Of a stretch of DNA of 55,165 bases, positions 3,937 to 54,481 are shown piece by piece (position 1 is the first letter of the stretch; each line of letters begins with the position of its first letter). The translations under genes and the position numbers were made by a program. The stretch is taken from assembly GCF_001194135.2 (NCBI RefSeq), contig NC_068984.1:121405465-121460629 (forward strand), in the 5' to 3' direction. The stretch comes from Octopus bimaculoides. Its lineage: Eukaryota. Under the pieces are notes generated by a model. The model worked only from the letters and a program-made list of their open reading frames with translations. It was not told the origin of the DNA and did no database searches.

Positions 3937-4040
3937 NNNNNNNNNNNNNNNNNNNNNNNNNNNNNNNNNNNNNNNNNNNNNNNNNNNNNNNNNNNNNNNN
4001 NNNNNNNNNNNNNNNNNNNNNNNNNNNNNNNNNNNNTATA

Positions 4041-4130
4041 TAGGCGCAGGAGTGGCTTCAGGCGCAGGAGTGGCTTCAGGCATAGGAGTGGCTTCAGGCG
4101 CTAGAGCGGCTTTAGGCACAGGAGTGGCTG
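4041..4130 (+). repeat. 18-bp tandem amplification of the SINE B head (ggcgcaggagtggcttca)
   Basis: About four units immediately precede the SINE body. Confidence 0.8.
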
Positions 4131-4946: not shown

Positions 4947-5478
4947 NNNNNNNNNNNNNNNNNNNNNNNNNNNNNNNNNNNNNNNNNNNNNNNNNNNNNN
5001 NNNNNNNNNNNNNNNNNNNNNNNNNNNNNNNNNNNNNNNNNNNNNNNNNNNNNNNNNNNNNNNNNNNNNNNNNNNNNNNNNNNNNNNNNNNNNNNNNNNN
5101 NNNNNNNNNNNNNNNNNNNNNNNNNNNNNNNNNNNNNNNNNNNNNNNNNNNNNNNNNNNNNNNNNNNNNNNNNNNNNNNNNNNNNNNNNNNNNNNNNNNN
5201 NNNNNNNNNNNNNNNNNNNNNNNNNNNNNNNNNNNNNNNNNNNNNNNNNNNNNNNNNNNNNNNNNNNNNNNNNNNNNNNNNNNNNNNNNNNNNNNNTCTC
5301 ACAAATATAAGGACACAGGAAATGTGTCAAGGCCGACAGGAAGCGGTCCAGCTTCCCAGGGCTAAATAGCAGCAGTATGATTGCCTTATTGGGACTGTCA
5401 CATTAAGTTGACAGTATACAACTGCTTTATCGTAACACTGCTGCTTAAGTCTCTCTATGAGATTTATAGCTAGATCAT

Positions 5479-8932: not shown

Positions 8933-10015
8933 ATGTATGTATGTATGTATGTATGTCTCACATGTAGTAGCATATAAGCGTGTCTGTATGTTGCATCGTT
9001 TCTGACAAGAAATAGAGAGGAGGATATTAGCGTCTAAGGGAGGTAAGTTTTATCTGTCTTTTATTTCATTCTTTCTTATTTGGTATTTTAGTGAGAAGTG
9101 AAATATTTTTGCATGTTTTATTATATATCTTGGTATCTGAAGCAGCTGGAGATACGATAGTTTGACCAAAAGAACCGGCTATTGCAAGCAAAAATAAATA
9201 TTGAAAAAAATGCATTTGCCCAAATTTGGACATACGATAGTTTAACATAATAGCAATGTAATAATTTGAGATCAAACTGTTTCAATATGACAATATCGAA
9301 GGACGGCGAGCTGGCAGAAACGATAGCACGTCGGGCGAAAAGCTTAGCGGTATTTCGTCTGTCGTTACGTTCTGAGTTCAAACTCCGTCGAGGTGGACTT
9401 TGCCTTTCATCCTTTCGGGGTCGATTAAATAAGTACCAGTTACGCACTGAGGTTCGATATGATCGACTTAAACCCTTTGTCTGTCCTTATTTGTCTCCTC
9501 TTTGTTTAACCCCCTGTGGGCAATAAAGAAATAAATATGACAATATCGAAGTGTGTTATGTTAATAAATGAGTTATCCCATCTTGGTTGTGGTTATCTCA
9601 CCTTGTTAGTGTAATCTCAGATAATCAGTCAAGCTGCGGTCTGTGGACTTTCTGGATTTATCTTCTGCCTTTTCAGTCATTTTACTGTGGCCATGCTGGA
9701 GCCCCGCCTTGAAGAACTTTTAGTCGAATAAAGCGACTCCAGTACTTATTTTTTGGTAAGCCTGGCACTTATTCTATCGGTGTCTCTTTGCCGGACCGCT
9801 AAGTTGCGTAGACGTAAACATGCCAACACCGGTTGTCCAGCGGTGGTGGAGAAATGAGACTTGTTTCAGCTTATAAAATCCACTCACAAGGCTTTGGTCA
9901 ACCCGAGGCTATAATAGAAGACACTTGCTCAAGCTGCCACGCAGTGCGACTGGACTTGAAACCATGTGATTGGGAAGAGAACTTCTTACCACACAGCCAC
10001 GCCTGCGTCTTTTAC

Positions 10016-10898
10016 NNNNNNNNNNNNNNNNNNNNNNNNNNNNNNNNNNNNNNNNNNNNNNNNNNNNNNNNNNNNNNNNNNNNNNNNNNNNNNNNNNNNN
10101 NNNNNNNNNNNNNNNNNNNNNNNNNNNNNNNNNNNNNNNNNNNNNNNNNNNNNNNNNNNNNNNNNNNNNNNNNNNNNNNNNNNNNNNNNNNNNNNNNNNN
10201 NNNNNNNNNNNNNNNNNNNNNNNNNNNNNNNNNNNNNNNNNNNNNNNNNNNNNNNNNNNNNNNNNNNNNNNNNNNNNNNNNNNNNNNNNNNNNNNNNNNN
10301 NNNNNNNNNNNNNNNNNNNNNNNNNNNNNNNNNNNNNNNNNNNNNNNNNNNNNNNNNNNNNNNNNNNNNNNNNNNNNNNNNNNNNNNNNNNNNNNNNNNN
10401 NNNNNNNNNNNNNNNNNNNNNNNNNNNNNNNNNNNNNNNNNNNNNNNNNNNNNNNNNNNNNNNNNNNNNNNNNNNNNNNNNNNNNNNNNNNNNNNNNNNN
10501 NNNNNNNNNNNNNNNNNNNNNNNNNNNNNNNNNNNNNNNNNNNNNNNNNNNNNNNNNNNNNNNNNNNNNNNNNNNNNNNNNNNNNNNNNNNNNNNNNNNN
10601 NNNNNNNNNNNNNNNNNNNNNNNNNNNNNNNNNNNNNNNNNNNNNNNNNNNNNNNNNNNNNNNNNNNNNNNNNNNNNNNNNNNNNNNNNNNNNNNNNNNN
10701 NNNNNNNNNNNNNNNNNNNNNNNNNNNNNNNNNNNNNNNNNNNNNNNNNNNNNNNNNNNNNNNNNNNNNNNNNNNNNNNNNNNNNNNNNNNNNNNNNNNN
10801 NNNNNNNNNNNNNNNNNNNNNNNNNNNNNNNNNNNNNNNNNNNNNNNNNNNNNNNNNNNNNNNNNNNNNNNNNNNNNNNNNNNNNNNNNNNNNNNNNN
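10016..10898. other. Assembly gap. Others at 2962-2971, 3937-4036, 4947-5295, 18590-18883, 21018-21077, 35575-36125
   Basis: Runs of N; long ORFs spanning them are artefacts. Confidence 0.98.
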
Positions 10899-11097
10899 CT
10901 CACAACCTCACGATTGTAGGCTCGGCGCTCTAACCACTGACCTATGCACCTTCACACATACACACATGTACCACACACACACACACACACACATAAGAAA
11001 TAATCAAGATTCAGTTGAATTAGGTACTTGAGTTGAGGCACCAAGTCAGTCCGGTATTGTGCGCACAGTTCAAACTTAGGTGAATAAAAGGCGATTA

Positions 11098-12157
11098 AGT
11101 AACAGGTATGTCCAAGTATTAGTGCATTACGGCCGTTTCAAGCGGCTCCGTTTAATCGATCAATGCAAGCATTACATCAATTTGAAATAAACCGCTCTCC
11201 TCGGACGCATAAGACCATATAGGGTTTCAACATACAGGATACTCCATCATAATTTTTAGCAAAATTTTCATCAGAACTAGAGAATAAAAGAATTACAATG
11301 CTTACTGCTATTGTTGTAGCAGAATGAATTTAGGGAGAAAATACTTAAAACCTACTATATTTTAAGTTGCAGAAGAAAATAACAAGGATGGGGTCAAGAA
11401 ATAGTAGTGGTGATATAACTACATTCATCTTTATCCTTATCATATTCAAAAGGATCAATGCACCAAGTATTCTACATCCCCTTAGAATTAAAAACCATTA
11501 GGAATTGACAGTTAAGTTCTTGCTACAGGTGATAAATTAATTAATGTCAGATACTCTTCGTTACCCTTATTTTACTGTGACTATAAATTCGCCATGTCTA
11601 CATAAAAGAACATGCCTCAAAAGATGCGAGCAAGATAATGGTATATGGATAATGACCAGAAAGAGGAAAGCAGGGGTGGCTATCAATTAAAAGGGGCCTA
11701 AAGTAGAAAATAAAGGAGGTCACAATGAGATATATGTGAATATTAAGGGTACAGGGTAGAAAAGTGTATTTCCAAATTTAGCAAAATTTGTATATTACTA
11801 TTAATATATTATTATATTTTGTATATTGAATAATAAAATTATATATATACGTATATAATAAAATCATATATATACGTATATATATATATATATATATAAA
11901 AGAAATATGTTATGATTATAAAATGTAAATACAAATATATAATTGTAAATAACATATTGTAATTCTTTTATTCTCTAGTTCTGATGAAAAATTTGCTAAA
12001 ATTTATAATGGAGTATCCTGTATGTTGAAAACTTATATAATCGCATGGGTCCGAGGAGAGCGGTTTATTTCAAACTGATGTAATGCTTGCATTGATCGAT
12101 TAAATGGAGCCGCTTGAAACGGCCGTAATGCACGAATACTTGGACATCCTTGTTACT
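11098..12157. mobile_element. Non-autonomous foldback DNA element with ~200-bp terminal inverted repeats
   Basis: 11098-~11300 is the reverse complement of ~11955-12157. TA on both flanks; AT-rich non-coding interior. Confidence 0.8.
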
Positions 12158-17714: not shown

Positions 17715-18589
17715 TGGTTAAAAAAGAAGTGACAAAAAACTATATTCGGTATATTCAATAAAGGCAACAACGCAACGAAAAGCGTGACGAATATTAATGC
17801 AGTATATGGGGATCGGACAATAAGCGTAAGCCAATGTCAACGATGGTTCCAGAGATTCCGAGCTGGAAACTACAGCCTAGAAGACGAGCCTCGTCCTGGA
17901 AGATCTGTAGAACTCAACGAGGACGTCCTGTAAACCATGGTGGAACAAAATCCCATCGTAGCTGTTGAGGAACTAACAGAGAAGCTTGGATTTGGTTATT
18001 CCACCATTCATCGACACCTGCGTGCCATAGGAAAAGTCACCAAATTGGGTCATTGGGTTCCTCACAAACTTCCCGAGTTTAATTGCGCGCAGGGAGTGAA
18101 TGTGTGCTCTTCTTTGCTGTCACGTCTCACGAATGAAACTTTTTTGGACCGAAAAGCGACTGGTGGCGAGAAATGGGTTCTCTATAAACATGTCAAGCGC
18201 CGAAGACAGTGGTTAGGGAAAGGAGCAACACCGGCACCCCAGGCTAAAGAAGATCTTCACCCATGTAAGATGTTGTTATCTGTTTGGTGGGATATGAAAG
18301 GTTTAGTCCACTCTGAACTTTCAAACCCAAACCAAACGATAACAAAGGAGATCTACAGCAAGCATCTCGAGCGGCTTAAGTCAGCGCTAGAAAAAAACGA
18401 CCATCTTTGGTTTCAAGACGGAAGGTGTTCTTCCATCAGAATAATGCTCGGCCACGTACAGGGATTCCCCACCTTTCATATTCACCGGACATTGCCACAA
18501 CTGATTATCATTTATTCCGCAGGCTTCAAAATCATTTAGACGGAAAAAATATGAATTCTGAAGTCAGAACGGTACTGGAGGAGTATTTT
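17715..18589 (+). mobile_element. Mariner (DD34D) transposase pseudogene, truncated by an assembly gap
   Basis: QRWFQRFRAGNYSLEDEPRPGR, WVPHKL, TGGEKW, LLSVWWD, HQNNARP, YSPDIATTDYHLFR; contains stops and frameshifts. Confidence 0.9.
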
Positions 18590-19239
18590 NNNNNNNNNNN
18601 NNNNNNNNNNNNNNNNNNNNNNNNNNNNNNNNNNNNNNNNNNNNNNNNNNNNNNNNNNNNNNNNNNNNNNNNNNNNNNNNNNNNNNNNNNNNNNNNNNNN
18701 NNNNNNNNNNNNNNNNNNNNNNNNNNNNNNNNNNNNNNNNNNNNNNNNNNNNNNNNNNNNNNNNNNNNNNNNNNNNNNNNNNNNNNNNNNNNNNNNNNNN
18801 NNNNNNNNNNNNNNNNNNNNNNNNNNNNNNNNNNNNNNNNNNNNNNNNNNNNNNNNNNNNNNNNNNNNNNNNNNNNNNNNNNNNGAAGAAGAAGAAGAAG
18901 AAGAAGAAGAAGAAGAAGAAGAAGAAGAAGAAGAAGAAGAAGAAGAAGAAGAAGAAGAAGGAGGAGGAGGAGGGGGAGGAGGAGGAGGAGCGGTAGTAGT
19001 AAAAGAAGGAGAAGAAGAAAAAGAAAAAGACGGGAGTGGTATGACATATAGTAGACTGTTCATGGAATCTTCTTTAATGGTCCAGTGACCTAAAAGTTAC
19101 CTGTTGTGGTTGTAGCAGTAGTGGTAGGAACTGTTCTAAATAAATTCATGAGTAGCGACTGTTCTTGATATATCGTTTTTAATATTTGCGTGAGTATTAT
19201 TCTAAGATCCTTGTAGCAGTGTCATCTGTGGTGGAAGCA

Positions 19240-35220: not shown

Positions 35221-36400
35221 TCAGAACTAGAGGAGAAGTTTCAGGTGTGGAAGCAAGGTCTAGAATTGAAGGGCCTTAGAGTCAACCTAGCTAAAACCAA
35301 AATCTTAATAAGTAGGAAGGTAGATAAAACACAAACCCCTTCAGGTAGATGGCCCTGCTCAGTATGTAGAAAAGGAGTAGGTAGTAACTCTATAAGATGT
35401 ACCCGGTGCAAGCTATGGACACATAAGAGGTGCAGCAACATCAAAGGCAGGTTAACTAGCAAGTTAGTTTTTGTTTGTGGCAGATGTTCAGGTGCAATAA
35501 AGACTGTAAACAAACAGGAAACAACTTCTATCTCATTCCAGGGTGAAAAACTAGAGGTAGTCGATAGCTTCCGCNNNNNNNNNNNNNNNNNNNNNNNNNN
35601 NNNNNNNNNNNNNNNNNNNNNNNNNNNNNNNNNNNNNNNNNNNNNNNNNNNNNNNNNNNNNNNNNNNNNNNNNNNNNNNNNNNNNNNNNNNNNNNNNNNN
35701 NNNNNNNNNNNNNNNNNNNNNNNNNNNNNNNNNNNNNNNNNNNNNNNNNNNNNNNNNNNNNNNNNNNNNNNNNNNNNNNNNNNNNNNNNNNNNNNNNNNN
35801 NNNNNNNNNNNNNNNNNNNNNNNNNNNNNNNNNNNNNNNNNNNNNNNNNNNNNNNNNNNNNNNNNNNNNNNNNNNNNNNNNNNNNNNNNNNNNNNNNNNN
35901 NNNNNNNNNNNNNNNNNNNNNNNNNNNNNNNNNNNNNNNNNNNNNNNNNNNNNNNNNNNNNNNNNNNNNNNNNNNNNNNNNNNNNNNNNNNNNNNNNNNN
36001 NNNNNNNNNNNNNNNNNNNNNNNNNNNNNNNNNNNNNNNNNNNNNNNNNNNNNNNNNNNNNNNNNNNNNNNNNNNNNNNNNNNNNNNNNNNNNNNNNNNN
36101 NNNNNNNNNNNNNNNNNNNNNNNNNGCAAGCCAAGTAAGATCGTTGCCAGTGCCCCTGGACTGGCCTGTGCGGGTGGCACATAAAAGACACCATTTCGAG
36201 CGTGGCCGTTTTCGTGCGGGGTGACACGTAAAAGCACCCACTACACTCTCTGAGTGGTTGGCGTTAGGAAGGGCATCCAGCTGTAGAAACTCTGCCAAAT
36301 TAGATTGGAGCCTGGTGTTGCCATCCGGTTTCACCAGTCCTCAGTCAAATCGTCCAACCCATGCTAGCATGGAAAGTGGACGTTAAACGATGATGATGAT
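35221..36400 (+). mobile_element. 5'-truncated RTE-clade LINE with a Cys-rich (PHD-like) insertion in the RT; relatively young
   Basis: GLRVNLAKTKIL...WPCSVCRKGVGSNSIRCTRCKLWTHKRCS...VCGRC...LEVVDSFR. Gap 35575-36125; 3'UTR ends in (GAT)n; CpGs retained. Confidence 0.85.
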
Positions 36401-42594: not shown

Positions 42595-43039
42595 ATGAGC
42601 AGTTACAATGTATGCCAAGATGATGATATTAGTATAATACCAAACGAAGATGATGTTTCTGATGTTGCTGCAGCAAGTCCAAATATCACCTTTACTCTGT
42701 CTGCATCACGACAAAACCTTCCTTCATCCATTGGTATAACCTCTATGTCTGCTCTAAAAGATGCATATGAAGAACTGAAAAAGAAGTATAACGAGCTCAA
42801 TACAAGATATCAAGATTTATTGAAGCTTGTCGATGAACGGGGTATGAAGCAAATGAAAGGTTTGCCATCTGATAATCCTGATGAAATGAAACGCAGAAGT
42901 GAAGTCGATACACTACATAAAGCAGTCAGTAAACTGAAAAAGGAATTAGCAGCTGAGAAAACAAAAAATCAGAAACTCAGATCACAACTGCAAAGCCATA
43001 GTGTGGAAACAACTCCTAATACTTCTCTTACTAGTAAAG
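42595..43039 (+). CDS. Coding exon 1 of a TANK/NAP1(AZI2)/SINTBAD-like TBK1 adaptor (N-terminal DDDISII motif and coiled coils)
   Basis: Acceptor ttttacag| at 42590, ATG at 42595, donor AAG|GTTAGT after 43039 (phase 1). MSSYNVCQDDDISII...SMSALKDAYEELKKKY resembles the recalled NAP1 (EDDICIL...SHFALVTAYEDIKKRL) and SINTBAD (EDDISIL) N-termini. Confidence 0.85.
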
Positions 43040-43209
43040 GTTAGTAGATATTACGTTTTTCACCTCTACATTGGACGGTCATTTTGCAAGTATTTTTCTA
43101 TCTAAGGGACATCAGATTTGGTTTTACTGACTGCAGAAGAACCACTCAAGACAAAGTAAAGTGGTTGTGTGTGTCTGTACGTATATATATGTGTGTGTGT
43201 GTATGTATG

Positions 43210-43247
<38 letters not shown>

Positions 43248-43279
43248 TCACAATCAAGGTGCAGAAAAGGCGTATTCCG

Positions 43280-43640
43280 AATAAACAAGTTTTATCTGCC
43301 TTCCTACTTATTAAGACTTTGGCTTTTGCTAGATTGACTCTAAGGCCCTTCGATTCTAGACCTTGCTTCCACACCTGAAACTTCTCTAGTTCTGATAGTG
43401 GCTCAGCTATTCGGGCAAGGTCATCAGCATAGAGAAGCTCCCAGGAGCATCTTGTCTTGAATTCCTCTGTTATTGCCTAAAGGACTATGATAAATAAGAG
43501 GGGGCTGAGGACTGATCCTTGGTGGAGCCCTACTCCTACCTGGAATTCTTCACTGTACTCGTTGCCAGCCCTCACTTTACTGACAGCATCCCTGTACGTG
43601 GCTCATACAGCTCTTACTAATCACTCATCTATAGCAGATG
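43280..43640 (-). mobile_element. RTE-clade LINE fragment, same family as 35221, opposite orientation
   Basis: MWKQGLESKGLRVNLAKAKVLISRKADK; upstream ELLYADDL motif. Confidence 0.85.
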
Positions 43641-44055
43641 AGAAGCACTTAGTAGCACTCAGGAGTGGCTGGAGGGGAGTAGTCGATTACATCGACCTCA
43701 ATGCTTGACTGGTTCTTAATTTATTGACCCCGAAAGGATGAAAGGCAAAGTCACCCTCAGCGGAATTTGAACTAAGAACATAGCAGCAGGCAAAATACCA
43801 GCATCCTAACGGTTCTGCCAGCTCACTAAATTAATAATAATAATCCTTTCTACTTAAAGCACAAGGCCTCATATTTGAGGGAAGGGATTAAGTTGATTAC
43901 ACCTACCCTAATGCTTAACTGGTACTTATTTAATTGACCTTAAAAGAATGAAAGGCAAAGTTGACCTCACTGGAATTTGAACTCAGAACAGTGACAGGTG
44001 AAATACCACTAAGAATTTCGCCCAGCATGCTAATGATTCTGCCAGCTTGAGGCCT

Positions 44056-44093
44056 TAATAATAATAATAATGATAATAATAATAATAATAATA

Positions 44094-44147
<54 letters not shown>
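44056..44147. repeat. Inverted microsatellite (TAA)n-(TTA)n
   Basis: ~13 TAA units abut ~18 TTA units, forming an AT-only palindrome. Confidence 0.85.
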
Positions 44148-44149
<2 letters not shown>

Positions 44150-44238
44150 AAAAAAAAGAGAGACATTAATATAAACATTTCTGGCTTGTTTTTCTGTTTG
44201 TATTTGTTTTTTCTTTTTCTTTTTCTTTCTCTTTACAG

Positions 44239-44331
44239 AAATTGGCAGCATGGAAAGTCTCGACAAGTTGATGGAAAACATTCAGTTTTTAGAGAAGATA
44301 GTTGAAATTCATCAAATGGAAGTTAGGAAAA
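44239..44331 (+). CDS. Coding exon 2 (93 nt) of the adaptor gene; TBK1-binding-domain-like helix
   Basis: Long polypyrimidine tract plus ttacag| acceptor; donor A|GTATGT; phase 1-1. Reads (E)IGSMESLDKLMENIQFLEKIVEIHQMEVRK in frame with both neighbouring exons. Confidence 0.8.
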
Positions 44332-44489
44332 GTATGTACTTACTTTCTTTCAATTAATTAAGATCTTCATAAAATTATAGGTGTGAGCAAAAGCAGCAGG
44401 TAGAATTTTGACAGGATTTATTTACCAAGAATGTGGCACAAAGGAATCCAAAGACTGTCTTCAATGAAAGATGATAATTCTTTTATTAA

Positions 44490-44775
44490 TCTTGTTCCTT
44501 AAATGTCAGCTTAAGTGTCCATGCAGCATCACATAAAAGCATCTGTGTGGCGCCTTGTAAAACCACCTGTATGGTGTTACATAAAAGTGCCCATGCAGTG
44601 CCATGGAAAAGCATCCAGCACACTCTGTAAAGTGGTTGGTGTTAGGAAGGACATCCAGCTGAAGAAACCATGCCAAATCAGACTGGAGTCTGGTGCAGCC
44701 CCCTGGCTCGCCAATTCTGGTCACACCATCCAACCCATGCTAGCATAGACAATGGATGTTAAATGATGATGATGA
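44490..44775 (+). mobile_element. RTE-family 3' tail. Similar tails at ~28590-28810(-), 30960-31125(+), 37830-37940(-), 48690-48820(+)
   Basis: Shared ggttggtgttaggaaggacatccagc...ccaacccatgctagcatgg...gttaaatgatgatgatg. Confidence 0.7.
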
Positions 44776-45908
44776 CTCCAGATCTTCTTGGGCTAACTGT
44801 CACTATCATGCTCATGATAAAAATATTTAATAGCTGTAGGAGTTTTCATAGTATATTAGCTGGAAAATAGCCATACTTTATTTTCATGAGGAAGCTAGCA
44901 GAGCTACATATTAAATATAATTACTAGAGCTTGAAAAAAATAGTGGAAAACTATGTCAAAAAGAGCTTAAGTAAAATATATGAGGTGATATTTTGCAGTA
45001 AGACAAGGAAATAGGAAAAAATTTAGAAACCTCTCATGGAAAATGAGAGAATACCAGATCAGTGTTATATAAGCAATATGCAAAATGTGTAATGGAAAAC
45101 TGTCAGTAAGAAATGTCAAAAGCAAAACACCAAGAACTGCCCTTGTGGTTTTCTTGGGATAGTTTATAAGTTTTGCTGTAATGGAACCTTCAGGAGCTTA
45201 GTACATAAAGTACATTACATATTTAAGATGCTTAGTTTTTATTGCCATTAGAGAATTTTTATCTCTATGCAAATAGTCATGTATTAGATATTCATACCAG
45301 GGTTGTGGTGCTGTCAAGATATGTTGCAACTACTTTGTTACCAAATCTGTTCATAAACAACTGAAGACTGGTGTTTCACAACAGCGAAAAATTTAATCAG
45401 GAGAAACAGTTGAAATGAAGTATACCATCTTTTACATGGGTTAGGCCTGCACATGAGATAATATTGTTGTTCAAACGTATTCAATTCATGACACATTGTC
45501 ACTATTCTTCCTAGTACTTGAATTCATGTATTAATAACTCTATTGTAGTCATAATTTCTTCTTATTTTCCTTAAATGGTTTAGTCAGGATAAAGGGCACA
45601 GTGCCCATGACCTTCACAGGCCATCTATCATCAATTGTCTGAGGTTTTTTGTTTTTGTACATCATCTTCTTCATACAGTACCTTTTCTCATCTACCAGTG
45701 CCTTTTCTACATTGTCATTTTCTTCAATTCATATTGCTTAACTTCTCCTGAATATCTCAGGAAAAACGTTTAGCCTAGTTTTTTTTCTAATTGCTTCATG
45801 TTATCTGTGAGAATTTGTTGTCTCTATATTTTACTTTTTTACTACATTTCTTTATCAATATTTCTAGGATGTAAATTAATTGTGATTTTTACTTTACTAA
45901 TCTTTCAG

Positions 45909-46528
45909 TCCGTCTGCATAGAAATCCTTCCAATGTGATTGCAACATTATCCACCTCATCACATCCAAGAAAACAACTAGAACATAATGAACTTGATATC
46001 TTAAACCCAAGTGAGCATTTTAAAACTTGTTATCCTTGTAATGTGGAGCCTTCAGCTGAAATAGTTCAGGATGAGGATGATGATGACGATGATAATGATC
46101 CTAGCTGGCAGGATTTCAAGAGAGACCCATTTCAAACTCTACATAATCCTCAAAAAGTGATTGACTTGCATCAGAAGCCAAAAATTGATAAACTTACAGA
46201 TTTAAACAAAACTTTTCTGTATGAATCTACAACTCTTTCTCCTCAAAATTCTTCTGTGGCAGAGGCAGCATATAACCTTCCTTTTCAAAACCCTACAAAG
46301 AGGACCGAAGATGAGAATATTATTTGTCCTTATTGTTCAAGAAGCTTTCTTTATTTAGAAATGGGTAAATTCCAAGAGCATATTGCTAACTGTTCCTCCC
46401 AAGGTGAAACAAGAGACTCACACCGTAAATGCCCTGTATGTGACAAAAACTTTCAACATGTATCTCAAAAGGATTTTGAAGTGCATGTTAACATGCATTT
46501 TGACCAAATGGATGGGCTGGATATCTGA
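45909..46528 (+). CDS. Terminal coding exon of the adaptor gene; acidic tract and two C-terminal zinc fingers (CCHC then CCHH, UBZ-like)
   Basis: Acceptor tactaatctttcag| at 45908, in frame with ORF 45935-46528. Contains CPYC..HIANC and CPVCDKNF...FEVHVNMHFDQ. Spliced CDS is 445+93+620=1158 nt, i.e. 385 aa plus stop. Confidence 0.88.
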
Positions 46529-49079: not shown

Positions 49080-49085
49080 TTTATT
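49080..49085 (-). promoter_or_regulatory. Candidate polyadenylation signal of the TRP gene
   Basis: tttatt on + (AATAAA on -), about 200 nt downstream of the stop codon. Confidence 0.4.
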
Positions 49086-49285
49086 GATATCAGCCAGGAT
49101 CTTTTAATCCTTCTTTTCTTTTAACTGTGTGTGTGTGTGTGTACACATATATATTTTAATTTCATCTATTATGCTGATGAAGTATCTTTCGAATATTTTC
49201 CATTGATGTCTGCACTTTCTTTGGTTCTTTGATATCTAAACTAAAACTAGTGGATTCTGTAAGGATGTCTAACTTCTCATTTATT

Positions 49286-52200
49286 TCATTTTTGATTGTT
49301 TTTGTTTTTCTTTAGTGGTAAAATAGCGTAATATTTAATTGAATCGTCCTCATTATCAAGACATTTCATTCTTTCAATCTTTCCACGATAGAAGAGTAAT
49401 CTTACGCAAGGAAGAATCTTCTCAACTCGAATGGCTTGCTTAATTGAATCTATTTGCCAGTTAAGTTCGTTTTTTGATTTAATTACTGAATAAGTATCAT
49501 TTAACATTGCCGTCAGAAGATTTATAAAAATAATGATACCTATTAGAAAATATAAGCAATATAATGCTTTGTACATGTGAGTCAGTGAACTACCTTCATT
49601 CAAGGCATCTTGCAAACTAAAATCAAATATTTCTCCCATTCCTAACATTAAATTAAACAACGCAAAGATTGTTAACCAAGGGTTTTCGTCCTTAAGATTA
49701 CCGGAACCATTTAACCAGATATGAAATGAAAGCGAAAAAGCTAATAAAACGCACGTGTACATGCAAAAAAACCTCAAAATGTCCCTTTCTAACATTTCCG
49801 ATAGCACACGCCAAAAGTAATGCAATGGTTTCAAACCTCGTATAAAAGTTATGCCAAGAAGCCAACCATAGCATAAAACCACACCTAAACATATGTAGTA
49901 GTCTGGATTATTTGTACATCGCTGAATAATCCATGCGATAGAAAGTACTGAATAAATGGACATTATTATTGTTAATAGAAATTTTTTTCGTACATATTTT
50001 GTGAATTTTTTCAATTTATATTGACAAGAATTTTTATCAATGTCTGCACCTAAGTATAGTTTATTGTGTTGATGATGATTTTCATCATCCTCTTCAGGAT
50101 CCTCGTCACGTCCTTTATATCCTAAATAATTGCAGGTAGAACGGAACAAAGATATCAGACAGAAAATTAGGATTACAACTGGTTCACATAAGCTACAAAT
50201 AACTATTAGATTTAAGTTAATGTTCTTCACTTCATCTACTTTATATTTCACCAGCTGATTGGCATTGACAGTCAACAAGAGCATATGTGAAAAATGCACC
50301 AACATTGCCGCGGCACACAGAACCTGATTCATTTCTTTGTATACTACTGCGATATGTTTTAATGGTAAGATAGTGAAAAGTTCCCCAAGCGACGGCTTAG
50401 TTTCCATACTAAGAAATATTTCAAAGGCGCTGCTAGAAGGCATACTTGTATCAGAGTCTTTTTTAATGTTTTTGAAACGTATATCATTGTTTAACAGGAT
50501 TTGTGTCACATCAAAATACTTACAATCGTCTATATCAAACTGCGTTACATATTTTAGTGTCATCAGTTTATTTATAATGTCTTTAGCACATTTTATGAAA
50601 GCCAAACTAAACACACTTAACTGTTTTTTGTTCTTCACTTCAAAAATTAATTTTCGGAAGTCTTTGGAAGAAAATTTCAAGTTATTTTTAGAAGTAAAAT
50701 GATCATGTAGTATGTCGAAAAATTCGAGACATTCACTGTTTCTGATGCAAATTTTAACTAAATCATGGAGGACAGTATTTTCTTTCTCTTTGTACTTAAA
50801 TGTTAAATCAATATTGTGTTGAAGTAACCTTTTAAAGCAACATAAAAATCTTTTTTCAATGACTTTAAAAACTACAGTTTCTCCTTCTTTATTCCTTTTG
50901 TTGAGATCTGCTTTGTTCATTTTAAAGTCATAAATATCGAGCATCTTCTGAAATATTTCTGGTTGCCCGGCACGAATAGCTAAATGATATGGAGTATCAC
51001 CATTCATATCAGATGTATTACAGGTCAAACTACGGCATTCCCAAATAACGTCTGGTGAGCCATATAGTGCGGCCACATGAAGGGCATTTCTTCCTTCCTT
51101 ATCAATGTCATTTAAATTATCCCAAGAATGTCTGTTCATCATGTAATTAACTAAAAGCTTCATGACCTCGGCAGAAGTACTTTTAGATTTTGCAGCAATA
51201 TGCAAAATTGTTTCTCCATTGCAATTTTTAATATTAGCTTTTGCTCCTAATTTAAGAAACGCATTTATTGTTTCAAAATTTCCAGTCGAAGCAGCTAAAT
51301 GAAATGCGGTTTCCTCGTTATTATTTTGTTCATTAAGGAAATTTGGGTCCTTAAAACGCTCCACGATATCATGATGCTTACCTTGAGCGGCAATATGCAG
51401 TATTGTATTACCACCTTCATCTTTTATTTTCATATCTAATTTACGTTTTTCTAAAATCTCTAGTCCACTTAAATCTCCATTTTTTGCAATCTCAAACACA
51501 GGTGAGCGAGTGTTAAATAGCATCTTCATCTCGGTGCTTCCCTGAGTAATTTTTTCCGCAATAATATGTATGAGACCTTGAAAACAAGCTTTATTTCTCT
51601 TAAGTAGTGCAAAGGACCAAATATCCTTGCCTTCCATATTCTTGAGATAGACATTACAACCATATTCTATCAGCATCCGAACAATATGCACCTGATCATT
51701 TTGTATTGCCAAAAACAAAGCCGTATCTCCTTTTGCATTTGTTACATTAAGGTCTGCCTTATTCTGGATTAAAAGTCGTAAGACATCTTCGTGACCTTTA
51801 TTCGCTGCATAATGAATAGGATATAGCTGATAGCAGTCAGGGGTGTTCACATCAATCAGAGATGAGGCAATTATCGCTTCAACGATTTTACTGTAGCCGA
51901 AAGCTGATGCAAGATTAAGAGATGATATTAAATCTGATTGATGTTCATTTGTGAAATATTTTAAAAGAATGTTGACGCATTCGATGTGTCCATAACGTAC
52001 TGCCCAACGAAGTGCAGTACATCCATTAATGTTTTTTAAAAATGGGCAAGCACCCATACTTATAAGCTCTTCAATTAGTGACTTCTGATCACCCCGTGTC
52101 GCCCACATTAATGCGGTTTCTTCCATCAGAGTTTTACTATCTACGGTAATTCCCTGCGATTTATAGAAATTTGTTAATTCACTTAGGCCTAAATAAGCAG

Positions 52201-52639
52201 CTAAATGGTAACATGTTGTTGTTCGGAATAATTTCCCCGGAATATTCATAAGAACTTCTTGTAGAATAATTTCCGGACGATTTTCGTTTGGGAATTTGTC
52301 TAAGAAACATTTTGCCATTTCTTTATCGTTTGATTCAGTTATATATTGTAATAAACTTTTCTCAATAATTCCTTCATTTCTAACTAGATCATATTTCTTA
52401 AGCAAGATATATTCATCTAAATATTCAATTAGACACTTGACTGTTTCGATTTGGTTATCTTCCATAGCATATTGCAAGGCACGTTGTTTCAGAGAATCTG
52501 ATTTATTTTCCAGGTATTCTTTAAGAAGTTCTACTGAGTCATCTTTTACTTTACTTCGCAATTCATCAGGAGACGTAGCTGATTGTTCTGACCAGTCAAT
52601 GTCTTTGAATTGTGCAAAGTCATAATCTTCTAGGAGTCT
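49286..52639 (-). CDS. Ankyrin-repeat TRP cation channel with TRPV-type transmembrane/pore domain and ~16-18 ankyrin repeats; single large exon, 5' exon(s) not located
   Basis: 1119-aa open frame with many GxTALH-type ankyrin repeats. S4/linker GWLLGITFIRG...MLERDILRFF, pore MLGMGE, S6 INLLTAMLNDTY, TRP helix WQIDSIKQAIRVEK. The ORF's TTG-CAG start is really the acceptor tttttgcag|AGA. Confidence 0.92.
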   Translation of the reverse strand, partial: RLLEDYDFAQFKDIDWSEQSATSPDELRSKVKDDSVELLKEYLENKSDSLKQRALQYAMEDNQIETVKCLIEYLDEYILLKKYDLVRNEGIIEKSLLQYITESNDKEMAKCFLDKFPNENRPEIILQEVLMNIPGKLFRTTTCYHLAAYLGLSELTNFYKSQGITVDSKTLMEETALMWATRGDQKSLIEELISMGACPFLKNINGCTALRWAVRYGHIECVNILLKYFTNEHQSDLISSLNLASAFGYSKIVEAIIASSLIDVNTPDCYQLYPIHYAANKGHEDVLRLLIQNKADLNVTNAKGDTALFLAIQNDQVHIVRMLIEYGCNVYLKNMEGKDIWSFALLKRNKACFQGLIHIIAEKITQGSTEMKMLFNTRSPVFEIAKNGDLSGLEILEKRKLDMKIKDEGGNTILHIAAQGKHHDIVERFKDPNFLNEQNNNEETAFHLAASTGNFETINAFLKLGAKANIKNCNGETILHIAAKSKSTSAEVMKLLVNYMMNRHSWDNLNDIDKEGRNALHVAALYGSPDVIWECRSLTCNTSDMNGDTPYHLAIRAGQPEIFQKMLDIYDFKMNKADLNKRNKEGETVVFKVIEKRFLCCFKRLLQHNIDLTFKYKEKENTVLHDLVKICIRNSECLEFFDILHDHFTSKNNLKFSSKDFRKLIFEVKNKKQLSVFSLAFIKCAKDIINKLMTLKYVTQFDIDDCKYFDVTQILLNNDIRFKNIKKDSDTSMPSSSAFEIFLSMETKPSLGELFTILPLKHIAVVYKEMNQVLCAAAMLVHFSHMLLLTVNANQLVKYKVDEVKNINLNLIVICSLCEPVVILIFCLISLFRSTCNYLGYKGRDEDPEEDDENHHQHNKLYLGADIDKNSCQYKLKKFTKYVRKKFLLTIIMSIYSVLSIAWIIQRCTNNPDYYICLGVVLCYGWLLGITFIRGLKPLHYFWRVLSEMLERDILRFFCMYTCVLLAFSLSFHIWLNGSGNLKDENPWLTIFALFNLMLGMGEIFDFSLQDALNEGSSLTHMYKALYCLYFLIGIIIFINLLTAMLNDTYSVIKSKNELNWQIDSIKQAIRVEKILPCVRLLFYRGKIERMKCLDNEDDSIKYYAILPLKKNKNNQK

Positions 52640-54481
52640 CTGCAAAAAGTTTTATTTTAAAATTAACAAACAATATAAACAGTTGATGTCTGTATATAAT
52701 TATTAATTGTACTACAATGTTTAAGATAAGAATAAAATTTTGCACAATAAAACACAAATTATTTAACATTTAACTTTCCCAACTGGCATTTAAATTGAAA
52801 AATAAAATCTATAATAATAAAAGTGTAATTCTGTCTGTCCGTCTGGGACCCCTGTAGTTCAGTCTACATTTGCTCTGCAAAGACATATTTTTTTAAATCA
52901 GGATGATCCCGGAATTGAAACTCGGCCCTTCATTTGGTTCTTAAACATCTAGCATTGGGATCTGATTTAAAAGCATTTTGGTTGCTATTACTAGCAGGTA
53001 AAGCTTGGATGATCCACGCCAACTTCGTTGGCATTTGTCAAATGACGTCAGAGATCAAGGGGAAAATAAATGACACTTGCTTCGTTAATTTTACGTCGTA
53101 ATAAGAACTGGGATAAACTGACTAACAGTTGGAATTCATCTTGGGACTGGGAGAATAGAATGATTACATTACTGAATTAATTCTCATCTATCCATAACCT
53201 CTGATCAAACGCCACCATATAGTCATTATAGACGTATCATAGTGAATGTCATTTAGCTCTCTTTAGTTTTGGGCGGCAGGTCCAATTAGTTCTCTGCAAG
53301 AGCCAGCTTAAAAGTCTGCATGGAGTGTGGCTTTTTAGCTAGTTTAAAATAAATTAAAAGTTTCTTTTAGGACGGCTTAGAAAAACAACACTTTCTGGAA
53401 CGTCATAACAGATTGCAGAGAATTGGCAGTAATTCCATATAAACCTAAATCATTTCTAGGATTCTTGGAAAGGATATAACAAAACTGTTTGTAGTTGTCT
53501 TCTACAGATCGAGGAGAATCTGAGCACTAGTTCCTAAAAAGACACCAACTATACTGATTTTTTTTCTATTTGCATGAAATGATTAGCTGTGCATTCTCGT
53601 GTCATTTGGTTTGGTCAAAGCAGTGAGAGTTAGTTAAATATCTTGCTCAGGAAGAGTGATGAAATCTTGATATCCACACGAACCTCCGACTCTCCCACGA
53701 AAAAGGAATTAATACCAAACTTGGCATCCGATATTATTTAAATTTAAGGAACTTTAGGCATTTATTTCGACGCGCTATCATTTACTCACAACTGTTCACT
53801 CACGCCCGTCAATTATAATCCCTTCTATTATAGGCACAAAGTATGAAATTTGGGGTAAATGGGGGCGGAGACTAGTCGATTTCATCGACCCCAGTACTTG
53901 AGTGGTCCTTATTTCATCGACCTCGAAAGGTGGAATTTGAACTCAGAAGGAAAAGACAGACGAAACACCATTAAGCATTTTGTCCAGTACGCTAACAATT
54001 CTCCCAGTTCACTGCCTTAATAATAATAATAATAATAATAATGATGATGATGATGATGATGTGGATAATAATTTCAAAATTTGGTGCAGGGCCCGCAGTT
54101 TTTGAGGGGAGGGAAAAATCGATTACGTTGACACCAGTACGTGACTGATACTTATTTTATCGATCACAAAAGGATGAAAGACAAAATCGACCTCAACGGA
54201 ATTTGAACTCGGAACGTGAAGACGAGCGAAATGCTTTTTAAGCATTTTATCCGGCGTGCTAACGGTTCTGTCCGCTTGCCGTCTCAACTGTGATGATAAG
54301 GATTTCTTCCGACTATTTATTTTGAGTTCGAATTCTGCCACGGTTCACTTTGCTTTCATTATTTTAGGGTCGATGAAATAAAGTACCACTCAAGTACTGG
54401 GGTCAATATAATCGACTAGCTTCCTTCCGCCAAATTTCATACCTTGTGCCTATAATAGAAAGAAGAAAAAAAATAATCTTT

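What the first reader, a model, noticed from the sequence alone, without database searches (positions are those of the whole stretch)
49286..52639. TRPV-type channel carrying a TRPA-sized ankyrin array (~16-18 repeats)
Seen: by eye, about 18 ankyrin-like units (~50560-52480), the first two and last two degenerate. They lead into a membrane domain with TRPV hallmarks: NTVLHDLV and SVFSLA as the last repeats, GWLLGITFIRG (S4), MLERDILRFF (S4-S5 linker), NLLTAMLNDTY (S6), W...A..EK TRP helix and a short C-tail. Known: canonical TRPVs (vertebrate TRPV1-6, Nanchung/Inactive, OSM-9/OCR) have about 6 ankyrin repeats, whereas TRPA1 has ~14-18 and NOMPC ~29. Inference: a poorly characterised lophotrochozoan or cephalopod TRPV-like lineage with an expanded array, possibly a mechano-, thermo- or chemosensor.
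Basis: partly seen in the sequence, partly recalled or inferred. Interest (0 to 1): 0.85.

Follow-up and report, generated by a model that had tools for sequence, protein, structure and literature searches.

The report
Octopus ankyrin-rich TRP channel gene
This is the main coding exon of a real, already catalogued octopus ion-channel gene (LOC106868134, named "gamma-TRPA" in a 2026 survey); it has the overall build of a TRPA channel but keeps old-fashioned, TRPV-looking pore motifs, and its function is untested.

Summary
Window 49286-52639 (-) is one uninterrupted 3.35-kb exon, from splice acceptor to stop. It encodes 1117 of the 1150 residues of Octopus bimaculoides LOC106868134. An AlphaFold model shows 16 canonical ankyrin repeats plus 3 degenerate N-terminal hairpins, then a six-helix TRP channel domain.

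By raw sequence similarity the membrane domain is closest to TRPV channels. However, most of the cited "TRPV hallmarks" (S6 NLLxAM, the TRP-box W) also occur in NOMPC. The outer pore has TRPA1 length, not TRPV length. The best whole-chain structural match is Drosophila TRPA1 with 17 repeats. Non-cephalopod relatives carry a C-terminal coiled-coil-like heptad segment. My membrane-domain-only distance analyses do not resolve the placement, and TRPV never came out as the favoured partner.

The gene is not unknown. Molina-Carrillo et al. 2026 list this locus as "gamma-TRPA". Full-length relatives occur in gastropods, bivalves, a chiton and annelids.

What I add: octopods lost the coiled-coil-like tail, and their channel half evolves near-neutrally (dN/dS about 0.8-0.9, against about 0.4 for the ankyrin half) while the reading frame stays intact. 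Function is untested.

The parts
49286..52639 (-). Large terminal coding exon of O. bimaculoides LOC106868134. It encodes residues 34-1150 of the 1150-aa product and includes the TGA stop at 49286-49288.
   Evidence: ORF. 100% identity to P0001. Exon limits read directly. The gene range of 13 kb includes an upstream 33-aa exon outside the window.
52640..52655 (-). 3' splice acceptor: a polypyrimidine/AT-rich tract ending in tttttgcag, with the AG at 52641-52640.
   Evidence: Sequence read. P0001 reads ...NIPQ|RLLEDY across this junction.
52229..52585 (-). Three degenerate N-terminal ankyrin-like helical hairpins (U1-U3, residues 52-170). Beta-hairpin insertions follow U2 and U3.
   Evidence: AlphaFold2 DSSP elements. 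Unit table.
50549..52228 (-). Sixteen ankyrin repeats (U4-U19, residues 171-730), each 22-53 aa as cut. U17-U19 are less canonical and contain NTVLHDLV and SVFSLA.
   Evidence: Pfam Ank families. AF2 model with pLDDT 85-92. Unit table. Foldseek match to 17-repeat Drosophila TRPA1.
50369..50542 (-). Linker domain (residues 733-790): a beta hairpin at 733-743 containing the YFDV motif, then short helices.
   Evidence: AF2 DSSP. YDVT-type motif conserved in relatives. Weak alignment to the TRPV1 linker.
50123..50368 (-). Pre-S1 helix, S1 and S2 (residues 791-872).
   Evidence: AF2 helices 791-831 and 844-878.
50012..50122 (-). Acidic insertion in the cytosolic S2-S3 loop (GYKGRDEDPEEDDENHHQHN..., residues 873-909), present only in the octopod sequences.
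   Evidence: Alignment columns about 1045-1095 show it only in octopod sequences. pLDDT below 50.
49706..50011 (-). S3, S4 (GWLLGITFIRG), S4-S5 linker (LHYFWRVLSEMLER) and S5 (residues 910-1011).
   Evidence: AF2 helices. Pfam Ion_trans. H/N at the position of hTRPA1 G857 is a family signature.
49502..49681 (-). Pore region (residues 1020-1079): pore helix, GMGE filter, a possible second short helix at 1041-1048, and S6 (INLLTAML). The filter-G to S6-N spacing is 39 residues.
   Evidence: AF2 model, low confidence for the second helix. Spacing and fingerprint comparison.
49415..49495 (-). TRP helix (residues 1082-1108), containing the invariant W1094 and ending in ...VEK.
   Evidence: W1094 is invariant in the 13-sequence alignment. 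AF2 helix. Aligns to the TRP boxes of TRPV5 and TRPV1.
49289..49378 (-). C-terminal beta strands (KYYAILP, matching the RWYxxV motif of relatives and RWCFRV of TRPV1) and a short tail. No coiled coil.
   Evidence: AF2 strands 1121-1141. Alignment. Heptad scan.

Best explanation
The region is the body of a functional gene for a group-1 TRP channel subunit. The gene belongs to a lophotrochozoan-wide lineage that a 2026 cephalopod survey named gamma-TRPA.

The family's build is TRPA-like, in this order:
- about 16 canonical ankyrin repeats;
- a beta-hairpin linker;
- S1-S6 with a TRPA-length outer pore;
- a TRP helix;
- a C-terminal beta strand;
- in non-cephalopod members, a coiled-coil-like tail.

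The pore and TRP helix keep the ancestral group-1 motifs (N-L-I-A in S6, W in the TRP box). TRPV, TRPN and TRPC also keep these motifs, and TRPA1 has lost them. That, together with slow evolution on both sides, is why the membrane domain looks 'TRPV-type' to similarity searches.

Inferred, not shown: four subunits form a non-selective, Ca2+-permeable cation channel with a GMGE filter. The ankyrin array acts as the cytoplasmic regulatory or docking scaffold. The activating stimulus is unknown.

In octopods the lineage is derived. The coiled-coil-like tail is lost, an acidic S2-S3 loop has been gained, the S6 residue corresponding to hTRPA1 I957 is Thr, and the channel half evolves much faster than the ankyrin half. 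This suggests a changed or relaxed gating or pore function while the protein is retained.
For: **Identity and published name**
- 100% identity to LOC106868134.
- Table S1 of PMC13402157 lists LOC106868134/chr4, 1150 aa, as gamma-TRPA.

**Architecture**
- AF2 model and repeat table.
- Foldseek best channel hit is 7ykr, Drosophila TRPA1 with 17 ankyrin repeats: 1121 aligned columns, E 6e-22. NOMPC scores 5.6e-19 and TRPV5/6 about 1e-12.
- Heptad tail in 14 non-cephalopod relatives: a/d positions 70-100% hydrophobic (80-100% in 13 of them). It is absent in the two octopod sequences.
- Filter-G to S6-N spacing is 39 in 27 of 34 family members. hTRPA1 has 39, TRPVs 32, NOMPC 37.
- Fingerprint: family H-F-F-Y-N-L-I-A-W; NOMPC G-F-F-Y-N-L-I-A-W; TRPV G/S-F-F-F/Y-N-L-I-A-W; hTRPA1 G-F-F-F-N-L-I-G-R.

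**Distribution**
- Full-length relatives in Patella, Lymnaea, Littorina, Pomacea, Physella, Pecten, Solemya, Dreissena, Liolophura, Batillaria, Dimorphilus and Paralvinella.
- 114 representative clusters at E<=1e-10 for the membrane domain alone.
- The same two-coding-exon gene structure in Patella.

**Retention in octopods**
- The ORF is intact in O. bimaculoides, O. vulgaris and a third octopod.
- Under neutrality about 19 nonsense substitutions are expected in the channel half alone, giving P about 4e-9 of none.
- dN/dS is 0.35-0.42 for the ankyrin half and 0.78-0.95 for the channel half.
Against: - Raw similarity of the membrane domain is clearly higher to TRPV than to TRPA1.
- The family lacks TRPA1's derived S6/TRP-helix residues. 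Whether other TRPA clades share those residues could not be checked here.
- My tests used a single verified TRPA sequence (human TRPA1). They gave contradictory preferred topologies under two alignments.
- The published TRPA placement used untrimmed full-length Clustal alignments with no TRPVL references. Ankyrin repeats may therefore have driven that placement.
- The second pore helix is predicted only at low confidence.
- There are no expression or functional data.
- dN/dS near 1 in the channel half could mean that channel function is being lost in octopods.
Confidence: 0.5

Rival explanations
1. One reading: this is a TRPV-lineage channel (sister to, or within, TRPV/TRPVL) whose ankyrin domain expanded from about 6 to about 16-18 repeats.
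For: - Only TRPV chains appear among the best 60 PDB hits of the membrane half.
- The family profile scores TRPV5 at 106 bits and TRPV1 at 91 bits, against hTRPA1 at 49.
- Mean Scoredist from the family to TRPV1 is 1.88, no greater than TRPV1 to TRPV5/6 at 2.02.
- There is weak similarity to the TRPV1 linker, and the RWY / RWCF C-terminal strand motifs match.
- The GMGE filter resembles GMGD of TRPV1.
- The abalone study reports unclassified TRPs near TRPV/TRPVL.
Against: - The S6 and TRP-box fingerprint is identical in NOMPC, so it looks ancestral rather than TRPV-specific.
- The family lacks the 7-residue-shorter outer pore of TRPVs.
- It has a 16-repeat array whose best structural match is Drosophila TRPA1, and relatives have a coiled-coil-like tail.
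- Family+TRPV is favoured in only 6% and 24% of quartets.
- It does not match the TRPVL fingerprint published in eLife 2022, which has F at 956, A at the TRP-box W and W at 944.
Confidence: 0.15
2. This is a separate, ancient group-1 TRP family, neither TRPA nor TRPV. It branches near the TRPA/TRPV/TRPN split, evolves conservatively, and is retained in Lophotrochozoa and possibly other eukaryotes.
For: - Its characters are mosaic.
- All deep nodes are unresolved, at 17-34% bootstrap.
- The preferred quartet partner flips between TRPA1 and NOMPC depending on the alignment.
- The family is among the best non-TRPA hits of hTRPA1, at up to 45 bits against 36.8 for TRPV3. It also scores 57-73 bits with a TRPV5 fragment.
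- H/N replaces the near-universal S4-S5 glycine, a family-specific feature.
- Related long-array sequences with the same signature occur as intronless ORFs on metagenome contigs of unknown organisms.
Against: - A published ML+Bayesian tree puts the cephalopod members inside TRPA.
- My analyses are distance-based, use few reference sequences and are too weak to establish a new family.
Confidence: 0.25
3. In octopods the gene is losing channel function, either becoming a pseudogene or being retained mainly as an ankyrin scaffold.
For: - dN/dS is 0.78-0.95 over the whole membrane half, including the pore and S6/TRP helix, against 0.35-0.42 in the ankyrin half.
- The coiled-coil-like tail is lost.
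- Pfam Ion_trans is barely above its cut-off, at 25.5 bits against 42.8 in Patella.
- Octopus is the long branch, with 31-37% identity to other molluscs where gastropods and bivalves share about 50%.
Against: - The reading frame is intact in three octopod genomes. P is about 4e-9 for the channel half under neutrality.
- The invariant W1094 is kept, as are the S6 asparagine and the filter glycine positions.
- The pairwise Nei-Gojobori estimates rest on small counts.
Confidence: 0.1

Closest known systems
gamma-TRPA clade of Molina-Carrillo et al. 2026 (Front Physiol 17:1851308; PMC13402157)
   Same: It is the same gene. Their Table S1 lists LOC106868134/chr4, PV783903, 1150 aa, 'non-annotated', proposed name gamma-TRPA. 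The clade has BS 100 / PP 1.00 and is found in octopods, decapodiforms and Nautilus.
   Different: - They describe the clade from cephalopods only and say that wider sampling is needed. Here, full-length relatives are found across molluscs and annelids.
- They do not report the TRPV-like similarity of the membrane domain, the retained TRP-box W, the loss of the coiled-coil-like tail in octopods, or the fast-evolving channel half.
TRPA1 (human 6V9V/6WJ5; Drosophila 7YKR)
   Same: - A long N-terminal array of 16-17 ankyrin repeats, and the best whole-chain Foldseek channel match.
- The order of linker, membrane domain, TRP(-like) helix, beta strand and coiled coil, as seen in non-cephalopod relatives.
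- Identical filter-to-S6 spacing of 39 residues.
   Different: - hTRPA1 has G958 and R975 where the family has A and W.
- The membrane-domain profile scores it at only 49 bits.
- The octopus protein has no coiled-coil tail.
TRPV channels (TRPV5/6, TRPV1-4, Inactive, OSM-9-like)
   Same: - Highest sequence similarity of S3 through the TRP helix.
- A TRP box of the form W..Q/E...EK followed by P.
- A GMG(D/E) filter, as in TRPV1.
- C-terminal strand motif RW(Y/C)F.
   Different: - TRPVs have about 6 ankyrin repeats (established knowledge), against 16 plus 3 here.
- Their outer pore is 7 residues shorter.
- They have no coiled coil (established knowledge).
- There is no tree or quartet support for a specific grouping.
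TRPVL (Peng et al. 2015; Nematostella, Hydra, Capitella)
   Same: It is described as a TRPV-like sister family retained in cnidarians and annelids, and in molluscs according to the abalone paper. That distribution overlaps with this family's.
   Different: The published TRPVL fingerprint (W at 944, F at 956, A at the TRP-box W) does not match the family's Y, L and W. No TRPVL sequence was available for a direct comparison.
Unclassified Hdh-TRP_21/22 of Pacific abalone (PMC12980990)
   Same: These are molluscan TRPs that cluster near TRPV and TRPVL without belonging to either. They may belong to the same lineage.
   Different: Their identity cannot be checked, because no sequences or accessions were held.

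Membership tests
TRP channel superfamily, group 1 | Six-helix membrane domain with a pore loop between S5 and S6, followed by a TRP helix | tested here: met
   Pfam Ion_trans. AF2 model shows S1-S6, a pore helix and a TRP helix. PDB hits to the TRPV S3-TRP region at 1e-13.
TRPV | N-terminal domain of about 6 ankyrin repeats | tested here: not met
   16 canonical repeats plus 3 degenerate helical hairpins.
TRPV | Membrane domain most similar in sequence to TRPVs | tested here: met
   TRPV5 106 bits, TRPV1 91, hTRPA1 49, NOMPC 43-62.
TRPV | Short outer pore (filter G to S6 N about 32 residues) | tested here: not met
   39 residues in the octopus protein and in 27 of 34 family members. TRPV1, TRPV5/6 and 10 of 17 TRPV-like hits have 32.
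TRPV | Membrane domain groups with TRPV in phylogeny | tested here: inconclusive
   Deep NJ nodes have 17-34% support. Family+TRPV is favoured in 6% and 24% of quartets, and was never the preferred topology.
TRPA | Long N-terminal array of about 14-18 ankyrin repeats | tested here: met
   Best structural channel match is Drosophila TRPA1 with 17 repeats.
TRPA | C-terminal coiled coil after the TRP-like helix | tested here: not met
   Absent in the octopod proteins, which have a tail of about 40 aa. A heptad segment is present in 14 non-cephalopod relatives.
TRPA | TRPA1-type S6/TRP-like helix (L-I-G in S6; no TRP-box W) | tested here: not met
   The family has L-I-A (L-T-A in octopus) and an invariant W. 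Only human TRPA1 was available as a reference.
TRPA | Outer pore of TRPA1 length with a second pore helix | tested here: inconclusive
   The length matches exactly, 39 against 39. A second helix at 1041-1048 is predicted, but with pLDDT about 50.
TRPA | Groups with TRPA in phylogeny | tested here: inconclusive
   A published full-length tree says yes, as gamma-TRPA. My membrane-only quartets favour family+TRPA1 in 75% with one alignment and 18% with another.
TRPVL | Published fingerprint (eLife 2022, Table 1): W at 944, F at 956, A at the TRP-box W position | tested here: not met
   The family has Y, L and W at these positions.
TRPVL | Direct homology to Nematostella or Capitella TRPVL sequences | not testable with these tools
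   No TRPVL sequence could be retrieved. The named look-ups returned none.
TRPN (NOMPC) | About 29 ankyrin repeats, with a NOMPC-type membrane domain | tested here: not met
   16 plus 3 repeats. NOMPC membrane domains score 43-62 bits. NOMPC separates from the rest at 100% bootstrap in the NJ tree.

The most novel reading that the evidence does not exclude
The lineage (cephalopod 'gamma-TRPA' plus the mollusc and annelid relatives found here, and possibly the intronless metagenomic homologues) is a distinct, ancient group-1 TRP family that branched near the TRPA/TRPV split. It would preserve the ancestral combination of a long ankyrin array, a coiled coil, and a canonical TRP box and pore. In octopods its channel half would be undergoing adaptive or relaxed evolution.
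Probability: 0.25. Interest if true: 0.6.

Novelty: already known. Interest (0 to 1): 0.33.

Why it matters
The gene itself is annotated, and a 2026 paper already names it, so it is not a discovery.

What could matter is evolutionary. The lineage combines TRPA architecture with ancestral, TRPV-like pore and TRP-box motifs, and it evolves slowly outside cephalopods. It is therefore a useful anchor for resolving how TRPA and TRPV, two major thermo- and chemosensory channel families, relate to each other. It could also help reconstruct their common ancestor.

Three observations are testable and not in the literature I could read:
- the family extends well beyond cephalopods;
- octopods lost the coiled-coil-like tail;
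- the octopod channel half evolves nearly neutrally while the reading frame is preserved.

No member of the lineage has been characterised functionally.

Tried and rejected
1. A protein database search with the membrane half alone returned nothing, not even the self-hit. This is a limit of the word index, not biology.
2. A profile search with the 13-sequence full-length alignment was swamped by generic ankyrin proteins and added only one family member.
3. Cluster-name look-ups for mid-scoring and TRPV-like representative hits returned almost no organism names. I could therefore not say which other phyla carry the related long-array homologues, nor label Nanchung/Inactive-type references.
4. 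I could obtain only one verified TRPA reference, human TRPA1. Searches of paper texts and supplements for printed TRPA sequences found none.
5. An NJ tree of 165 sequences that included fragments and a curated 78-sequence tree both left the deep nodes unresolved.
6. Quartet tests gave alignment-dependent answers. I do not claim a placement from them.
7. A recent retrogene origin for the single giant exon is rejected. Patella has the same structure of a small exon plus a giant exon.
8. A chance ORF or a chimeric gene model is rejected, because the full architecture is conserved across phyla.
9. A pseudogene is rejected on ORF retention.
10. Himmel & Cox 2020 was not held in the library.


Full report
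**What is in the sequence**

Window 49286-52645 on the minus strand holds one uninterrupted 1119-codon ORF. It is by far the longest real ORF in the window; every other ORF free of N runs is 200 aa or shorter.

The ORF is 100% identical to Octopus bimaculoides 'uncharacterized protein LOC106868134', P0001, 1150 aa. The protein's first 33 residues are not in the window. The ORF is preceded by a tttttgcag acceptor, so the exon begins at 52639. It ends at the TGA at 49288-49286.

In the chromosome assembly the gene spans 13 kb, with the small first coding exon about 9.6 kb upstream. The Patella vulgata relative has the same structure, with 1227 of 1256 residues in one ORF. The giant exon is therefore old and does not mark a recent retrogene.

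**Anatomy**

Pfam gives strong ankyrin matches and an Ion_trans match just above its cut-off. I built an AlphaFold2 model on an alignment of 13 relatives. Mean pLDDT is 73, and the ankyrin region reaches 85-92.

The model shows 19 helix pairs between residues 57 and 726. Sixteen of them (U4-U19) have ankyrin periodicity and the G-x-T-x-L-H-x-A motif. The three N-terminal pairs are degenerate.

After the array come:
- a beta hairpin;
- short linker helices;
- pre-S1 and S1-S6;
- a pore helix and a GMGE filter;
- a TRP helix with the invariant W1094;
- two C-terminal strands.

**Relatives**

Full-length relatives of 1180-1320 aa, with 26-31% identity over 88-98% of the query, occur in three groups:
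- gastropods: Patella, Lymnaea, Littorina, Pomacea, Physella, Plakobranchus and Batillaria;
- bivalves and a chiton: Pecten (two loci), Solemya, Dreissena (several loci), and the chiton Liolophura;
- annelids: Dimorphilus and Paralvinella.

Their database names are 'uncharacterized', 'hypothetical', 'ankyrin-3-like' or 'TRPA1(-like)'.

An exhaustive HMMER search with the membrane half alone found 436 representative clusters at E<=1e-3 and 114 at E<=1e-10. Many have the membrane domain starting near residue 700-830, which is the same long-array architecture.

**What is already published**

Molina-Carrillo et al. (Front Physiol, July 2026; PMC13402157) list this exact locus in their Table S1: LOC106868134/chr4, PV783903, 1150 aa, previously non-annotated. 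They name it gamma-TRPA.

They describe gamma-TRPA as a new TRPA clade with BS 100 / PP 1.00, found in octopods, decapodiforms and Nautilus. They note that wider sampling is needed to learn whether it exists outside cephalopods. Their trees used full-length Clustal Omega alignments and included no TRPVL references.

The abalone TRP survey (PMC12980990) reports one TRPVL-like gene and two unclassified TRPs near TRPV/TRPVL. I could not link these to this family because no sequences were held.

**TRPV or TRPA? Evidence for a TRPV resemblance**

- The membrane half alone hits only TRPV chains among its best 60 PDB matches, with TRPV5/6 at about 1e-13.
- A profile of the family's membrane domain scores a rabbit TRPV5 S3-TRP fragment at 106 bits, rat TRPV1 at 91, human TRPA1 at 49 and NOMPC proteins at 43-62.
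- The TRPA1 and TRPV1 reference sequences were written from memory and then verified against PDB chains. TRPA1 differed at one residue, and I used the PDB residue. TRPV1 was identical.

**Evidence that this resemblance is not specific**

I read the family's residues at nine of the positions (hTRPA1 numbering) of the published group-1 TRP fingerprint.

| Group | Residues at hTRPA1 positions 857, 884, 909, 944, 954, 956, 957, 958, 975 | Filter G to S6 N |
|---|---|---|
| Family | H-F-F-Y-N-L-I-A-W | 39 (27 of 34 members) |
| NOMPC | G-F-F-Y-N-L-I-A-W | 37 |
| TRPV | G/S-F-F-F/Y-N-L-I-A-W | 32 (TRPV1, TRPV5/6, most TRPV-like hits) |
| Human TRPA1 | G-F-F-F-N-L-I-G-R | 39 |

The S6 and TRP-box 'hallmarks' are therefore shared ancestral characters. 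They show only that the family lacks TRPA1's derived states. They also do not match the published TRPVL fingerprint.

The outer-pore spacing matches TRPA1 and not TRPV. The model also places a second short helix in that segment, at low confidence.

The best whole-chain structural match among channels is Drosophila TRPA1 'with 17 ankyrin repeats', at 1121 aligned columns. This is ahead of NOMPC and far ahead of TRPV5/6.

All 14 non-cephalopod relatives I examined carry a C-terminal heptad segment typical of a coiled coil. From general knowledge, TRPA1 has such a segment and TRPVs do not.

**Tree-like tests on the membrane domain alone**

An NJ/Scoredist tree of 78 sequences separates NOMPC at 100% bootstrap. 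It leaves TRPV, TRPA1 and the family unresolved at 17-34%.

Four-point quartet tests gave different answers under two alignments.

| Alignment | Family+TRPA1 | Family+NOMPC | Family+TRPV |
|---|---|---|---|
| 275-column MAFFT | 75% (plurality in 47 of 50 bootstraps) | 19% | 6% |
| 198-column HMM-aligned core | 18% | 58% | 24% |

The placement is unresolved with these tools and with a single TRPA reference. The one consistent outcome is that family+TRPV is never the preferred topology. The high raw similarity to TRPV is best explained by short branches on both sides.

**New observations on the octopod gene**

- *Lost tail.* The octopod proteins have lost the coiled-coil-like tail.
- *Loop insertion and S6 change.* They gained an acidic insertion in the S2-S3 loop. 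They carry Thr at the S6 position corresponding to hTRPA1 I957.
- *Long branch.* They share 31-37% identity with other molluscs, where gastropods and bivalves share about 50%.
- *Truncated RefSeq model.* The O. vulgaris genome contains an intact full-length ORF, although its RefSeq model stops at 796 aa.
- *Selection.* I compared O. bimaculoides, O. vulgaris and a third octopod assembled from run SRR11869385.
  - Nei-Gojobori dN/dS is 0.57 overall.
  - It is 0.35-0.42 in the ankyrin half and 0.78-0.95 in the membrane half, including the pore and S6/TRP helix.
  - Neutral decay is excluded: about 19 nonsense substitutions would be expected in the channel half alone, giving P about 4e-9 of seeing none.
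  - The protein is therefore retained, while its channel half is under relaxed or diversifying selection. That is unusual for an ion channel and has not been tested further.

**Mechanism: shown and inferred**

Shown: the domain architecture, the conservation of the family, and retention of the reading frame.

Inferred from homology to solved TRP channels:
- assembly as a tetramer;
- a non-selective cation pore with an acidic GMGE filter;
- the ankyrin array acting as a cytoplasmic scaffold coupled to the TRP helix through the linker beta sheet.

The stimulus is unknown. Nothing here supports a thermal, chemical or mechanical role over the others. I found no expression data for gamma-TRPA in the parts of the 2026 paper that I read. 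Its primer table covers beta-TRPA, not gamma-TRPA.

**Verdict**

The feature is real and was described accurately. The 'TRPV-type' label reflects similarity rather than demonstrated ancestry. The overall build is TRPA-like, the gene is already catalogued as gamma-TRPA, and relatives are widespread in Lophotrochozoa.

Interest is moderate to low. It would rise if a proper membrane-domain phylogeny showed a separate ancient family, or if the fast-evolving octopod channel half proved to be adaptive.

Noticed in passing
window 42595-46528 (+): The convergent neighbouring gene encodes a 385-aa product in the public annotation. Two of its exon ORFs encode a coiled-coil segment and two C-terminal C2H2 zinc fingers. 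The second finger matches Pfam Zn-C2H2_12, the autophagy-receptor zinc finger found in TAX1BP1/CALCOCO-type proteins.
   Followed up: partly
window 17937-19051 (+): A mariner-type transposase remnant (Pfam Transposase_1, 76 bits), interrupted by an assembly gap and followed by low-complexity sequence.
   Followed up: partly
window 35245-36138 (+): An ORF fragment with a PHD-type zinc finger. Its sequence context looks like a retroelement and it is interrupted by an N gap.
   Followed up: partly
window ~3940-4050, 4950-5290, 10020-10890, 18590-18880, 35570-36120: Runs of N (assembly gaps), seen as X runs in ORF translations. The 10001-12000 block shows GC 0.18 for this reason. Coordinates are approximate.
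   Followed up: no
L005 8858-12211 (O. vulgaris OX597817.1): The O. vulgaris orthologue has an intact full-length reading frame, 86% identical over 1120 aa. Its RefSeq protein, named 'TRPA1-like' (P0003), stops at 796 aa with a divergent end. This looks like a gene-model error rather than a truncation.
   Followed up: yes
L003 1001-5377 (ENA metagenome assembly ERZ25069296): A 1458-aa intronless homologue with a long ankyrin array, the same H-F-F-Y-N-L-I-A-W signature and the 39-residue outer pore lies on an environmental contig of unknown organism. Several similar 'mid-scoring' proteins come from JGI, ENA or Logan metagenomes.
   Followed up: partly
Pecten maximus P0010 (LOC117321715) and P0128 (LOC117321665); Dreissena P0143, P0269-P0271: Bivalves carry several paralogues of this family. 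The two Pecten loci are on the same chromosome-scale contig. The Dreissena copies lie on three different contigs.
   Followed up: no
window 49130-49150 (-) and 49276-49285 (-): An AATAAA hexamer directly follows the stop codon, and a second AATAAA lies about 200 nt downstream near 49085. There is also a short (CA)n microsatellite in the presumed 3' UTR.
   Followed up: no
window 50337-50702 (+) and 52296-52625 (+): Two antisense ORFs of 121 and 109 aa lie inside the exon. They are low-complexity, AT-rich translations and I found no evidence that they are genes.
   Followed up: no
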